A stretch of 63,372 nucleotides of DNA, counting the filler, from Olpidium bornovanus S191 (taxonomy: Eukaryota; Fungi; Olpidiomycota), in NCBI GenBank assembly GCA_017911155.1. It is 29 parts of 29 records of this genome, joined end to end, with 100 filler letters (N's around TTAATTAATTAA, not from the genome) between each part and the next. Parts side by side here need not be neighbours in the genome. Positions count along the whole stretch, not along the records: positions 26,389 to 29,697 come from JAEFCI010007757.1; 28 more parts are not named here. The stretch is one strand, 5' to 3'. The notes beneath the pieces were generated by a model that was not told the DNA's origin, searched no databases, and saw only the letters and a list, made by a program, of their open reading frames with translations. The number at the start of each line of letters is the position of its first letter. Position 1 is the stretch's first letter. The position numbers and the translations under genes were made by a program. Below, in pieces: positions 26,271 to 27,880 of this stretch.

Positions 26271-26429
26271 CGGGGGGGGGGCGCCCCCNNNNNNNNNNNN
26301 NNNNNNNNNNNNNNNNNNNNNNNNNNNNNNNNTTAATTAATTAANNNNNNNNNNNNNNNNNNNNNNNNNNNNNNNNNNNNNNNNNNNNCCCCGCCCCCCG
26401 CCCCACCCCCCCCCCCCCCCGCGCCCCCG

Positions 26430-26469
<40 letters not shown>

Positions 26470-26815
26470 GGGGGGGGGGACGCAGCCCGTGCGCCCGTCG
26501 CAGCGGAGAGCGCCGGCGAAGGTCGGAGAAGCACGGGGCGACGTCAACAAAGTGCCGCCGGCTCCTTCCTTCCCGGCGACCTCCCTCCCCTTCCCCCCAT
26601 CCCCCCTTCCCCCCCTCCTCCCCCCCCCCGGCCCGCCCTCACCACCACCCGTATCAGCTGCAACGCCCCCTTCCCACTGAGTCAACTGCAACCCCGCACG
26701 CCCGCCGCAGCAGAGCGCGCCGACGGAGGAGGGGGGTTGGGGAGAAGGGGGAAGCAAGGGGGGGGGACGTTCAGAGCGCTTATCGGCTGGTTCCGCCTTG
26801 TGTTTGACCGGCACC

Positions 26816-26991
26816 TGACGTCATCCGCACTCTTTCGCCCGGGCATTTGCCACCCCGGTTAATTTTGCCCGCCAATCCGCGCTTTCATCTCCCGACGCGT
26901 TCCACCCCCCAATCAGACGCGTCTCCCGCTCTCAACCGCCGCCCAGCCGCCCCCGCCTGCCCCGCCGCCTCGCCCCCCTTAGGGTATAAAA
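26816..26991 (+). promoter_or_regulatory. Pol II-type promoter motif cluster: CRE palindrome, CCAAT boxes, GC boxes, TATA box
   Basis: TGACGTCA at 26816-26823, CCAATC near 26872 and 26909, several CCGCCC, and TATAAAA at 26985-26991, ~40 nt upstream of the repeat array. Confidence 0.5.
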
Positions 26992-27029
26992 GGCGCTCGC
27001 TCCCCGCCAAAAAATCTCCTTTTTCTCAA

Positions 27030-27880
27030 CACGAACTACATAGGCAGCCGAAACTCCTTCAACTGAGGAGCGTAGGTTTGCGCCAACCTTTTCCTCCTTA
27101 TTTTAGCTACTTACTATAGCTCCTTACTATAGCTCCCTTACTTTAGCTCCTTCTCCCCTGTAGAAGAACTACGTCACCTCTGATCCCGGAAACCGGGTAC
27201 GTAGGCAGCCGAAACTCCGAAAGGAGCGTAGGTGCGAGGCCCCCGCCCCCTCCTCTCCCTCCTTACTTTAACTCCTTCCTTTCCCTCCGTAGAAGAACTA
27301 CGTCACCTCTGATCCCGGAAACCGGGTACGTAGGCAGCCGAAACTCCGAAAGGAGCGTAGGTGCGAGGTCCCCGCCCCCTCCTCTCCCTCCTTACTTTAT
27401 CTCTTTCCTTTTCCCTCCGTAGAAGAACTACGTCCCCTCTGATCCCGGAAAACCGGGTACGTAGGCAGCCGAAACTCCAATAGGAGCGTAGGTTCGAGGC
27501 CCACCCCCTCCTCTCCCTCCTTCCTTTTCCTTCGTTTCCATTTTTCTTCGCTTGGAACGACGTTCCCTCTGATCCCGGGGCAACCGGGTACGTTGGCAGC
27601 CGAAACTCCTCCGGTTGAGGAGCGTAGGTCCGAGGGAATTCCCGCTTTCTATTTTTTTTCCTTCCCCTCCTTCCCCCGTTTGGAACTACGTTTCCTCTGA
27701 TCCCGGGCAACCGGATACGTAGGCAGCCTAAACTTCTCCAGTAGGAGCGTAGGTCCGAAGGAAGCCCTGCCTTTCCCTCCTTCTTTTCCCTCTTCTTCTC
27801 ATTTGGAACCACGTTCCCACTGATCCCGGCGGCAACCGGGTTACATTTGCAGCCAAAGCTTTTCGGAGCGGAGGTCCGGC
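27030..27880 (+). repeat. Tandem array of ~7 units (127-161 bp): conserved ~70-nt structured core plus a variable pyrimidine-rich spacer
   Basis: The core element T(A/T)GGCAGCC starts at 27041, 27202, 27331, 27462, 27593 and 27720, with a diverged copy near 27847. Consensus GAACTACGT-NNCCTCTGAT-CCCGG[loop]CCGGG-T-ACGTAGGCAGCCGAAA-CTCC[loop]GGAG-CGTAGGTNCGAGG. Confidence 0.95.

What the first reader, a model, noticed from the sequence alone, without database searches (positions are those of the whole stretch)
27030..27880. Promoter-driven tandem array of a conserved structured RNA-like module (pseudoknot topology, swapped tetraloops): candidate new ribozyme or ncRNA repeat
Seen: about 7 copies of a ~70-nt core separated by variable pyrimidine tracts. 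Stems are conserved while loops vary. Hairpin 1 is CCCGG/CCGGG with loops AAA, AAAA, GGCAA, GCAA and CGGCAA (GNRA-like). Hairpin 2 is CTCC/GGAG with loops GAAA, AATA and AGTA, extended stems (CTCCTC/GAGGAG), and GCTT-TTCG-GAGC in the last copy. The outer stem CTACGT/ACGTAG changes on both sides to CGACGT/ACGTTG in one copy; that pairing survives through G-U only on the plus strand. CCTC/GAGG (TTCCCTC/GAGGGAA in one copy) would cross the outer stem. The order A-B-hairpin-A'-hairpin-B' is the same as the HDV-ribozyme P1-P2-P3-P1'-P4-P2' layout, although the HDV-specific L3 and J4/2 sequences are not evident. The linkers CTGAT, GCAGCCGAAA and GCGTAGGT are highly conserved. Unit lengths (127-131, 161) do not keep a reading frame. 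The array starts ~40 nt after a TATA box with CCAAT/CRE motifs on the same strand. Inference: a multimeric structured transcript, possibly self-processing or retrozyme-like.
Basis: partly seen in the sequence, partly recalled or inferred. Interest (0 to 1): 0.75.

Follow-up and report, generated by a model that had tools for sequence, protein, structure and literature searches.

The report
Orphan tandem array, hairpin-bearing 70-nt core
A real tandem array of six and a half copies of a sharply bounded ~75-base core lies downstream of a eukaryote-style TATA promoter; it may encode a repeated RNA module, but nothing supports a ribozyme and no relatives were found to test the proposed fold.

Summary
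There are six full copies and one 5'-truncated copy of a ~70-78 nt core, with a period of 123-131 nt (161 for the first). CU-rich spacers separate them. The array starts about 40 nt after a consensus TATA box that has two CCAAT boxes and a perfect CRE upstream.

Cores are 70-100% identical and spacers 42-94%, and the conservation boundaries are sharp. All length variation inside the core falls in the loops of two short hairpins. Canonical tetraloops (GAAA, GCAA, UUCG) and most wobble pairs are valid only on the plus strand.

The structural reading is not proven:
- Only two pairs change on both sides.
- The covariation score is not beyond shuffles.
- The proposed pseudoknot helix is only 69% paired.
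- Neither single units nor the whole array fold more stably than shuffled sequence.

Rfam gives no match to any ribozyme or ncRNA family. HDV-like and hammerhead defining features are not met.

No related array was found in viral, metagenome or prokaryote genome collections, in phages or plasmids, or through the protein searches. The source organism is unknown; it looks like a eukaryote or a large nuclear DNA virus.

Best reading (about 0.35): a plus-strand Pol II noncoding transcript made of reiterated two-hairpin modules with CU-rich linkers, acting as a multivalent binding platform. Interest is moderate to low until relatives or expression data exist.

The parts
26816..26823 (+). Perfect CRE/ATF palindrome TGACGTCA, about 170 nt upstream of the TATA box
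   Evidence: motif scan; sequence
26872..26913 (+). Two CCAAT boxes, at 26872 and 26909, on the same strand as the TATA box
26985..26992 (+). Consensus TATA box TATAAAAG, followed by a CT-rich block. A transcription start around 27015-27030 is inferred, not shown.
27033..27077 (+). u0: a 5'-truncated core. The outer-stem 5' arm is joined directly to the 3' half. It keeps the GCAGCCGAAA linker, hairpin 2 (5 bp with a 7-nt loop) and GCGUAGGU.
   Evidence: nhmmer E 1e-8; alignment A1
27078..27165 (+). Spacer 0 (88 nt). It contains a 13-nt micro-repeat (CTCCTTACTATAG, 4.5 copies, 27094-27152) and ends in a YAG.
   Evidence: TRF
27166..27233 (+). u1 core: outer stem CUACGU/ACGUAG, hairpin 1 CCCGG-AAA-CCGGG, hairpin 2 CUCC-GAAA-GGAG
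27295..27362 (+). u2 core, identical to u1. The following spacers are 94% identical.
27425..27493 (+). u3 core, with loops AAAA and AAUA
27555..27629 (+). u4 core. The outer stem is changed on both sides to CGACGU/ACGUUG (U-A to G-U). Hairpin 1 has loop GGCAA. Hairpin 2 is extended to 6 bp. The crossing helix is extended to 7 bp with the GAGGGAA at 27632-27638.
27683..27754 (+). u5 core. Hairpin 1 has loop GCAA and a C-A mismatch at its base. Hairpin 2 is 5 bp with a U-G wobble. The linker G is changed to U.
27806..27875 (+). u6, the degenerate terminal copy. The outer stem and crossing helix are broken, hairpin 1 is kept, and hairpin 2 is re-formed as GCUU-UUCG-GAGC.
27234..27805 (+). Spacers s1-s5 lie between the cores (27234-27294, 27363-27424, 27494-27554, 27630-27682, 27755-27805). 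They are 51-62 nt, 77-85% pyrimidine and rich in CCCU/CCUCC. All except s1 carry a run of four or more T.

Best explanation
The array is most likely the 5' part of a plus-strand noncoding transcript made by RNA polymerase II from the TATA/CCAAT/CRE promoter at about 26816-26992. About 870 nt of this RNA would consist of one partial and six full copies of a ~75-nt module.

Each module is proposed to fold locally into two parts. The first is a 6-bp stem enclosing a conserved single-stranded CCUCUGAU strand and a 5-bp hairpin. The second is a hairpin of 4-6 bp sitting on a GCC/GGU stem across a GAAA/CGUA internal loop. Modules are strung together by CU-rich linkers that cannot pair with each other.

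The proposed function is a multivalent platform: many identical small folds and invariant single-stranded motifs, including two UAGG per unit, a 5'-splice-site-like AG|GU after every core, and CU tracts. Such a platform would bind several copies of one or a few RNA-binding proteins or snRNPs, as repeat modules do in known long noncoding RNAs.

What is shown: the array, the selective conservation of the core, the confinement of indels to hairpin loops, and the presence of the promoter motifs. What is inferred: transcription, strand, fold and binding function.
For: - The array is real.
- Cores are 70-100% identical and spacers 42-94%.
- Invariant columns run without a break from GAAC to GGUNCG. 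Flanks that are not low-complexity are already unalignable between u1-u3 and u4-u6. Array homogenisation alone would not produce this.
- Apart from a single-base insertion in u6, all gaps in the core alignment fall in the two hairpin loops, while the stems stay paired: 97-100% of cells for hairpins 1 and 2 and 92% for the outer stem.
- Insertions in hairpin 2 of u0, u4 and u5 add complementary bases on both sides.
- One U-A to G-U double change in u4, an invariant G-U pair, and GAAA/GCAA/UUCG loops are valid only on the plus strand.
- The TATA box, two CCAAT boxes and the CRE are on the same strand, immediately upstream.
- No coding signal: no Pfam hits, no ATG on the plus strand, unit lengths out of frame, and no relatives for the 216-aa minus-strand ORF.
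Against: - Thermodynamics give no support. Single units have z-scores of -0.7 to -1.1, the whole array +0.5, and the minus strand about 0. The modular fold is not recovered in the whole-array minimum-energy structure.
- Covariation is statistically weak, with only 6 paralogous copies.
- Indels and stem-perfecting changes at palindrome centres can arise by templated mutation of DNA without selection.
- CU tracts evolve quickly by slippage, which inflates the contrast between core and spacer.
- There is no evidence of transcription, no relatives, and no known source organism.
- The first AATAAA on the plus strand is 2.4 kb downstream of the TATA box.
Confidence: 0.35

Rival explanations
1. The array acts at the DNA level: reiterated binding modules that work as an enhancer, a spacer-promoter-plus-repeat block of the kind found in rDNA intergenic spacers, or an auxiliary part of a viral lytic replication origin. 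Here the short dyads and the homopyrimidine/homopurine mirror tracts matter as double-stranded or triplex DNA, not as RNA.
For: - The period of ~130 bp and the layout of a promoter followed by repeats match known spacer-promoter/enhancer-repeat arrangements. This comparison rests on my own knowledge and was not tested here.
- The region has strong, sustained purine/pyrimidine strand asymmetry and further repeats upstream: a 37-nt direct repeat at 26486/26693, a C40/G49 junction, and AP-1 and CRE sites.
- The whole 3.3-kb piece lacks convincing genes.
- There is no excess RNA folding energy.
Against: - The spacing between dyad arms varies (3-6 nt and 4-9 nt) while the arms are kept. This is unusual for dimeric DNA-binding sites.
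- The u4 double change preserves pairing only as G-U, not as a DNA palindrome.
- No rRNA gene lies in the piece.
- The only origin-like motif is a single 7-of-8 match beside a (TA)5 tract at 28136, outside the array.
Confidence: 0.22
2. The array is a neutral or nearly neutral minisatellite. It expanded by unequal crossing-over. The apparent stems with variable loops come from quasi-palindrome templated mutation plus partial homogenisation, and there is no function at either the RNA or the DNA level.
For: - u1 and u2 are identical in the core and 94% identical in the spacer, and the edge copies u0 and u6 are degenerate. This is the classic pattern of array turnover.
- The fold is no better than shuffled sequence.
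- Covariation is not significant.
- No relatives were found anywhere searched.
Against: - The conservation boundaries are sharp, and the cores of u3-u5 stay 83-87% identical while their spacers, including the non-repetitive first and last 10 nt, are near random.
- Unpaired linkers such as CUGAU, GCAGCC and GGAGCG are invariant in all copies that have them.
Confidence: 0.2
3. The array is a multimeric precursor that is cut into unit-length small RNAs. Cutting could be by a new self-cleaving motif, by host nucleases as in polycistronic small-RNA clusters, or each unit could be its own Pol III gene.
For: - A conserved ~75-nt core with divergent spacers is the usual look of tandem small-RNA genes.
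- Junction nucleotides are invariant, as in ribozymes.
- The order of helices permits an HDV-like nested double pseudoknot in u1-u5.
- Five of six spacers carry a run of four or more T.
- u3 carries a box-B-like GGTTCGAGGCC.
Against: - No Rfam ribozyme, snoRNA, tRNA or other family matches at E<=10, and ARAGORN finds nothing.
- HDV-like details and the hammerhead core are not met (see the membership table).
- The box-B-like site is not conserved in the other units: GGTGCGA and GGTCCGA.
- There is no box C or ACA motif.
- The pseudoknot helix is 69% paired, with a single pair changed on both sides.
- The array has only 6-7 copies and none are dispersed, unlike retrozymes and satellite ribozymes.
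Confidence: 0.13
4. The cores are short noncoding exons and the CU-rich spacers are ~61-nt introns of a multi-exon transcript.
For: - Every core ends in AG|GU (GUGCGA, GUUCGA or GUCCGA).
- Spacers s0-s2 have branch-point-like CUUAC/UUAAC motifs, a polypyrimidine tract and a UAG immediately before the conserved GAAC.
Against: - Spacers s3-s5 contain no AG at all before the next core; they end UUUGGAAC or GCUUGGAAC.
- The +4 and +6 positions of the putative donors are off consensus.
- The exons would be 68 nt, with no ATG.
- No splice-aware data are available.
Confidence: 0.1

Closest known systems
Repeat-module long noncoding RNAs (Xist A-repeat; Drosophila hsr-omega repeats; NORAD/FIRRE repeat units). 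The comparison rests on my own knowledge.
   Same: Several copies (6-9) of a short conserved core that can form small hairpins with tetraloops. The cores are separated by pyrimidine- or U-rich spacers of variable length, near the 5' end of a Pol II transcript. Short invariant single-stranded motifs are present; UAGG here resembles the hsr-omega nonamer AUAGGUAGG.
   Different: No sequence similarity to any of them. The core is three times longer than the Xist A-repeat core. Transcription and protein binding are not shown. The host is unknown.
HDV-like self-cleaving ribozymes (HDV, CPEB3, drz families)
   Same: The order of complementary segments, A-B-hairpin-A'-hairpin-B', allows a nested double pseudoknot. 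An invariant C follows hairpin 2.
   Different: - No covariance-model match.
- P1 is 6 bp and starts with C-G, not G-U.
- P3 is 5 bp, with a 3-nt L3 in three units, so P1.1 cannot form.
- There is a 4-nt linker between P2 and P3, and a 10-nt J1/4.
- J4/2 is 9 nt.
- P2 is only 4 bp in three units.
Spacer-promoter plus ~135-140-bp enhancer repeats of rDNA intergenic spacers, and pyrimidine-rich IGS transcripts (pRNA, PNCTR). The comparison rests on my own knowledge.
   Same: A promoter directly followed by about ten or fewer tandem units of ~130 bp. The sense strand is pyrimidine-rich and the surroundings are noncoding and repeat-rich.
   Different: No rRNA gene or Pol I promoter could be identified in the 3.3-kb piece. 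The TATA/CCAAT/CRE set is of the Pol II type.
GC-rich tandem repeats in abundant herpesvirus origin-adjacent transcripts (EBV IR2 125-bp repeats in BHLF1; MDV 132-bp repeats, PMC12425393)
   Same: A repeat period of 125-132 bp downstream of a TATA promoter in a repeat-rich noncoding region with homopurine/homopyrimidine tracts.
   Different: In those viruses the copies are near-identical and overlap ORFs. Here the copies have diverged, with a conserved core only. No herpesvirus gene or match was found. CpG is not depleted (observed/expected about 1.0).

Membership tests
HDV-like ribozyme | Match to the Rfam covariance models of the family (HDV, CPEB3, drz-Agam and others) | tested here: not met
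   cmscan at E<=10 on the 3.3-kb piece and on 376 nt holding three units found no hit in the array.
HDV-like ribozyme | Nested double pseudoknot in the order P1-P2-P3-P1'-P4-P2' | tested here: inconclusive
   The order of complementary segments is present in u1-u5. The crossing helix is 4 bp in u1-u3, 7 bp in u4 and 6 of 7 in u5. It is 69% paired overall, with one pair changed on both sides.
HDV-like ribozyme | P1 of about 7 bp, beginning at the cleavage site with a G-U wobble | tested here: not met
   The outer stem is 6 bp and opens with C-G in five of six units. The feature itself is recalled from established knowledge.
HDV-like ribozyme | A short P3 with an L3 that supplies two nucleotides to P1.1, and a short J4/2 carrying the catalytic C | tested here: not met
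   Hairpin 1 is 5 bp. Its loop is AAA or AAAA in u1-u3, which cannot pair with the GC that follows P1'. J4/2 would be 9 nt.
HDV-like ribozyme | Site-specific self-cleavage | not testable with these tools
   This needs in vitro transcription.
Hammerhead ribozyme / retrozyme | Conserved core CUGANGA ... GAAA ... UH around three stems, with a covariance-model match | tested here: not met
   The sequence is CUGAUCC, with no GA. Thirteen nucleotides lie between hairpin 1 and GAAA. There is no Rfam hit. There are only 6-7 copies and none are dispersed.
Twister, twister-sister, pistol, hatchet, hairpin and VS ribozymes | Match to the family covariance model | tested here: not met
   No hits at E<=10.
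tRNA-like or Pol III small-RNA gene array | Cloverleaf or internal A and B boxes conserved in each unit, followed by a T-run terminator | tested here: not met
   ARAGORN finds none. The box-B-like GGTTCGAGGCC occurs only in u3 and the position varies in the others. T-runs of four or more occur in five of six spacers, but these spacers are 73-85% pyrimidine.
C/D or H/ACA snoRNA cluster | Box C (RUGAUGA) with box D (CUGA) and a terminal stem, or H and ACA boxes | tested here: not met
   Only CUGA is present. There is no box C and no ACA, and no Rfam hit.
Repeat-module lncRNA (functional analogy, not a sequence family) | Several conserved cores separated by variable pyrimidine-rich spacers within one transcript | tested here: inconclusive
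   The core-and-spacer architecture is met. That it forms a single transcript, and its expression, cannot be tested here.
rDNA intergenic spacer repeats | Location between large- and small-subunit rRNA genes | tested here: inconclusive
   No rRNA match lies within the piece. The flanks beyond the piece are not available.

The most novel reading that the evidence does not exclude
The ~75-nt core is a new class of self-processing or ligand/protein-binding RNA fold, with a three-helix core and a pseudoknot. It would be made as a multimer and released as unit-length RNAs, and it would be unrelated to any Rfam family.
Probability: 0.05. Interest if true: 0.85.

Novelty: new member of a known kind. 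Interest (0 to 1): 0.33.

Why it matters
If the core is a functional RNA module, this would be a compact natural example of a multivalent repeat RNA. It has a well-defined promoter and unusually clear module boundaries, which would make it useful for studying how repeat lncRNAs recruit proteins. The less likely case of a self-processing motif would add a ribozyme class. As it stands, the array is an orphan. Without the source organism, expression data or orthologous arrays, it cannot be told apart from a DNA-level repeat element or a minisatellite. Its present value is as a lead, not a discovery.

Tried and rejected
**RNA family and gene searches**
- Rfam at permissive E-values, twice: only chance hits outside the cores.
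- tRNA scan: none.
- Bacterial promoter/terminator scan: uninformative.

**Searches for relatives**
- An exact 15-mer of the core in viral contigs gave 36 single chance hits.
- Gapped core patterns in viral, metagenome and prokaryote genome collections gave nothing.
- A looser pattern that fits all six units gave only single-copy hits, all consistent with chance.
- A core profile run over all 286 fetched loci gave one weak hit, which lies in a bacterial coding sequence.
- blastn against phages and plasmids gave nothing.

**Attempts to identify the source through proteins**
- Ten ORFs have no Pfam domain, and none is in the 15-billion-protein collection by exact look-up.
- The 216-aa minus-strand ORF across the array has no homologues.
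- The ORF at the right edge gave one spurious repeat-protein hit among 1.84 billion representatives.

**Literature**
- Searches for core motif strings and for 129-bp repeats led nowhere relevant.
- The MDV 132-bp repeats differ: their copies are identical and coding.
- The AmFV paper gave no match.

**Ideas considered and dropped**
- An AUG-free leader as a signal: not significant against dinucleotide shuffles, P 0.16.
- A coding repeat on the minus strand: the frame changes between units and there are no relatives.
- Alphaherpesvirus oriS: only one 7-of-8 OBP-like site.
- Human origin: nothing suggests it.

Full report
**Scope.** Only the piece 26389-29697 was analysed.

Yes. Tandem Repeats Finder reports a 129-nt period (3.6 copies, 89% matches, score 663) at 27148-27609. 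The repeat finder recovers five-copy families of the core with spacings of 123-131 nt, and 161 nt for the first interval. A profile built from the six aligned cores finds exactly six full copies (E 1e-19 to 1e-25) and one partial copy (27037-27080, E 1e-8). It finds nothing else on either strand of the piece.

The copies are u0 27033-27077, u1 27166-27233, u2 27295-27362, u3 27425-27493, u4 27555-27629, u5 27683-27754 and u6 27806-27875.
- u0 lacks precisely the segment between the two TACGT motifs of a full unit.
- u6 is degenerate.

The spacers are 51-88 nt and 73-85% pyrimidine.

**2. What favours a constrained, plus-strand, folded module?**

(a) *Selective conservation.* Cores are 70-100% identical pairwise against 42-94% for the spacers that follow them. 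In a full-unit alignment the invariant columns run from GAAC to GGUNCG, and conservation collapses abruptly on both sides. This includes the first and last ~10 nt of the spacers, which are not simple pyrimidine runs. u1 and u2 are a recent duplicate. u3-u5 carry the real signal: 83-87% core identity with spacers that are near random.

(b) *Indels sit in the loops.* Apart from a single-base insertion in u6, all gaps in the core alignment lie in the loops of the two hairpins.
- Hairpin 1 loops are AAA, AAA, AAAA, GGCAA, GCAA and CGGCAA.
- Hairpin 2 loops are GAAA, GAAA and AAUA. u0, u4 and u5 have longer inserts that add complementary bases on both sides, giving 5-6 bp. u6 has GCUU-UUCG-GAGC.
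- The stems stay paired: 97-100% of cells for hairpins 1 and 2 and 92% for the outer stem.

(c) *Strand.* Several features are valid only on the plus strand:
- GAAA, GCAA and UUCG are special tetraloops there; their complements are not.
- An invariant G-U closes a GCC/GGU stem.
- The u4 outer-stem double change (U-A to G-U) and the U-G wobbles in u5 and u6 pair only on the plus strand.
- Against this, two C-A mismatches (u5, u6) would favour the minus strand.

(d) *Orientation.* The array follows a good Pol II-type promoter on the same strand.

**3. What speaks against it, or limits it?**

- Folding energy gives no support. Units have z-scores of -0.7 to -1.1, and +0.5 for u6. The whole 885-nt array scores +0.53 on the plus strand and -0.01 on the minus strand. 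The modular fold does not dominate the global minimum-energy structure.
- Covariation is thin. However, only two pairs change on both sides, and 68 of 500 shuffles reach the covariation score.
- The crossing CCUC/GAGG helix is 69% paired. It is 4 bp in u1-u3, 7 bp in u4, 6 of 7 in u5 and lost in u6.
- Indels and stem-perfecting changes at the centre of DNA quasi-palindromes can arise without selection, and CU tracts turn over quickly by slippage. Points 2a and 2b are therefore suggestive, not decisive.

**4. The ribozyme claims**

Rfam 15 at E<=10 returns nothing in the array. This holds for the whole piece and for a 376-nt input holding three units, which loosens the filters and E-values.

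HDV-like features fare as follows (defining features recalled from established knowledge, checked):
- The helix order is compatible.
- P1 is 6 bp and opens C-G rather than G-U.
- P3 is 5 bp, with a 3-4-nt A-only loop in three units, so P1.1 cannot form.
- There is a 4-nt P2-P3 linker, a 10-nt J1/4 and a 9-nt J4/2.

The hammerhead core is absent (CUGAUCC). I put self-cleavage at about 5%. Only a cleavage assay can settle it.

**5. Other readings examined**

- *Mini-exons.* Every core ends AG|GU, and s0-s2 look like ~61-88-nt introns, with CUUAC/UUAAC motifs, a pyrimidine tract and a UAG. s3-s5 contain no AG before the next core, so this can hold at most for the first three junctions.
- *Pol III units.* A box-B-like GGTTCGAGGCC occurs only in u3, and ARAGORN finds nothing. 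T-runs are expected in pyrimidine-rich spacers.
- *snoRNA cluster.* There is no box C or ACA.
- *Coding.* There is no ATG on the plus strand up to 27972, though this is not significant (P 0.16). Units are out of frame. The 216-aa minus-strand ORF changes frame between units and has no Pfam domain or homologue.
- *DNA-level element.* The context would suit a spacer-promoter/enhancer-repeat block or a viral origin-adjacent repeat. It is repeat-rich, strand-asymmetric and gene-free, with a 37-nt direct repeat at 26486/26693, an AP-1 site, a C40/G49 junction, and a (TA)5 tract beside GGTTCGCAGG. The variable arm spacing and the G-U-only compensation argue against simple protein-binding palindromes.

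**6. Relatives and source**

None were found.
- The core patterns are absent from viral, metagenome and prokaryote genome collections, apart from single chance hits.
- Phages and plasmids give nothing.
- Protein-level tricks to find the contig or its relatives failed.
- Literature searches gave only analogies.
- Composition (58% GC, CpG observed/expected about 1.0) and the promoter style suggest a eukaryote without CpG depletion or a nuclear large DNA virus.
- The C/G homopolymer block at the left edge may be a contig-end artefact.
- Nothing suggests human origin.

**7. Verdict**

The array and its anatomy are confirmed. The interpretation as a structured plus-strand RNA repeat is plausible, and I take it as the best single explanation (about 0.35): a multivalent repeat-module noncoding RNA. 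The pseudoknot and ribozyme layer is unsupported.

The rivals remain open: a DNA-level repeat element (0.22), a neutral minisatellite (0.20), a processed small-RNA precursor including a ribozyme (0.13), and mini-exons (0.10).

The module has no known family, but the kind of thing it most resembles is known. Interest is moderate to low until the source, expression or orthologues are available.

Noticed in passing
window 26389-26479: A run of about 40 C (with a few G/A interruptions) abuts a run of 49 G (one A) at the very left edge of the piece, forming a near-perfect 40-nt inverted repeat. It could be a contig-end or sequencing artefact (poly-G) or a real hairpin-forming homopolymer junction.
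   Followed up: partly
window 26486-26522 and 26693-26729: A 37-nt GC-rich direct repeat (29 of 37 identical), 207 nt apart, upstream of the promoter. One copy follows the C/G homopolymer block and the other follows a C-rich tract (26580-26650), and a purine-rich tract lies downstream of each. An AP-1 site, TGAGTCA, lies at 26678.
   Followed up: partly
window 27094-27152: A 13-14-nt micro-repeat (CTCCTTACTATAG, about 4.5 copies) occurs only in the first spacer. Its CUUAC...UAUAG units look like reiterated branch-point and 3' splice-site signals.
   Followed up: no
window 27303-27953 (minus strand): A 216-aa ATG-initiated ORF runs through five repeat units, changing frame relative to the unit each time. 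It has no Pfam domain, no homologue and no exact database entry, so it is probably spurious.
   Followed up: yes
window 27635-27644: A perfect palindrome, GGGAATTCCC (NF-kB-site-like, with an EcoRI site), is present only in the spacer after u4. Its GGGAA half belongs to the GAGGGAA (27632-27638) that forms the 3' arm of the extended crossing helix of u4.
   Followed up: no
window 28136-28160: A (TA)5 tract is followed 5 nt later by GGTTCGCAGG, a 7-of-8 match to the alphaherpesvirus origin-binding-protein site as I recall it. There is no inverted partner site, so this is a weak lead only.
   Followed up: partly
window 28513-28530, 28812-28830, 29140-29159: Two T-rich runs (T9-A-T4 and T5-AG-T9) and an A20 run. 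The second T-run and the A20 run form an imperfect inverted repeat flanking about 300 nt. These may be retroposon tails or a foldback element. The only AATAAA on the plus strand is at 29429.
   Followed up: no
window 29508-29697: An ORF with a good Kozak-like context (GCCATGG) runs off the right edge of the piece. Its 94-aa extended translation has no real relative among 1.84 billion representative proteins.
   Followed up: yes
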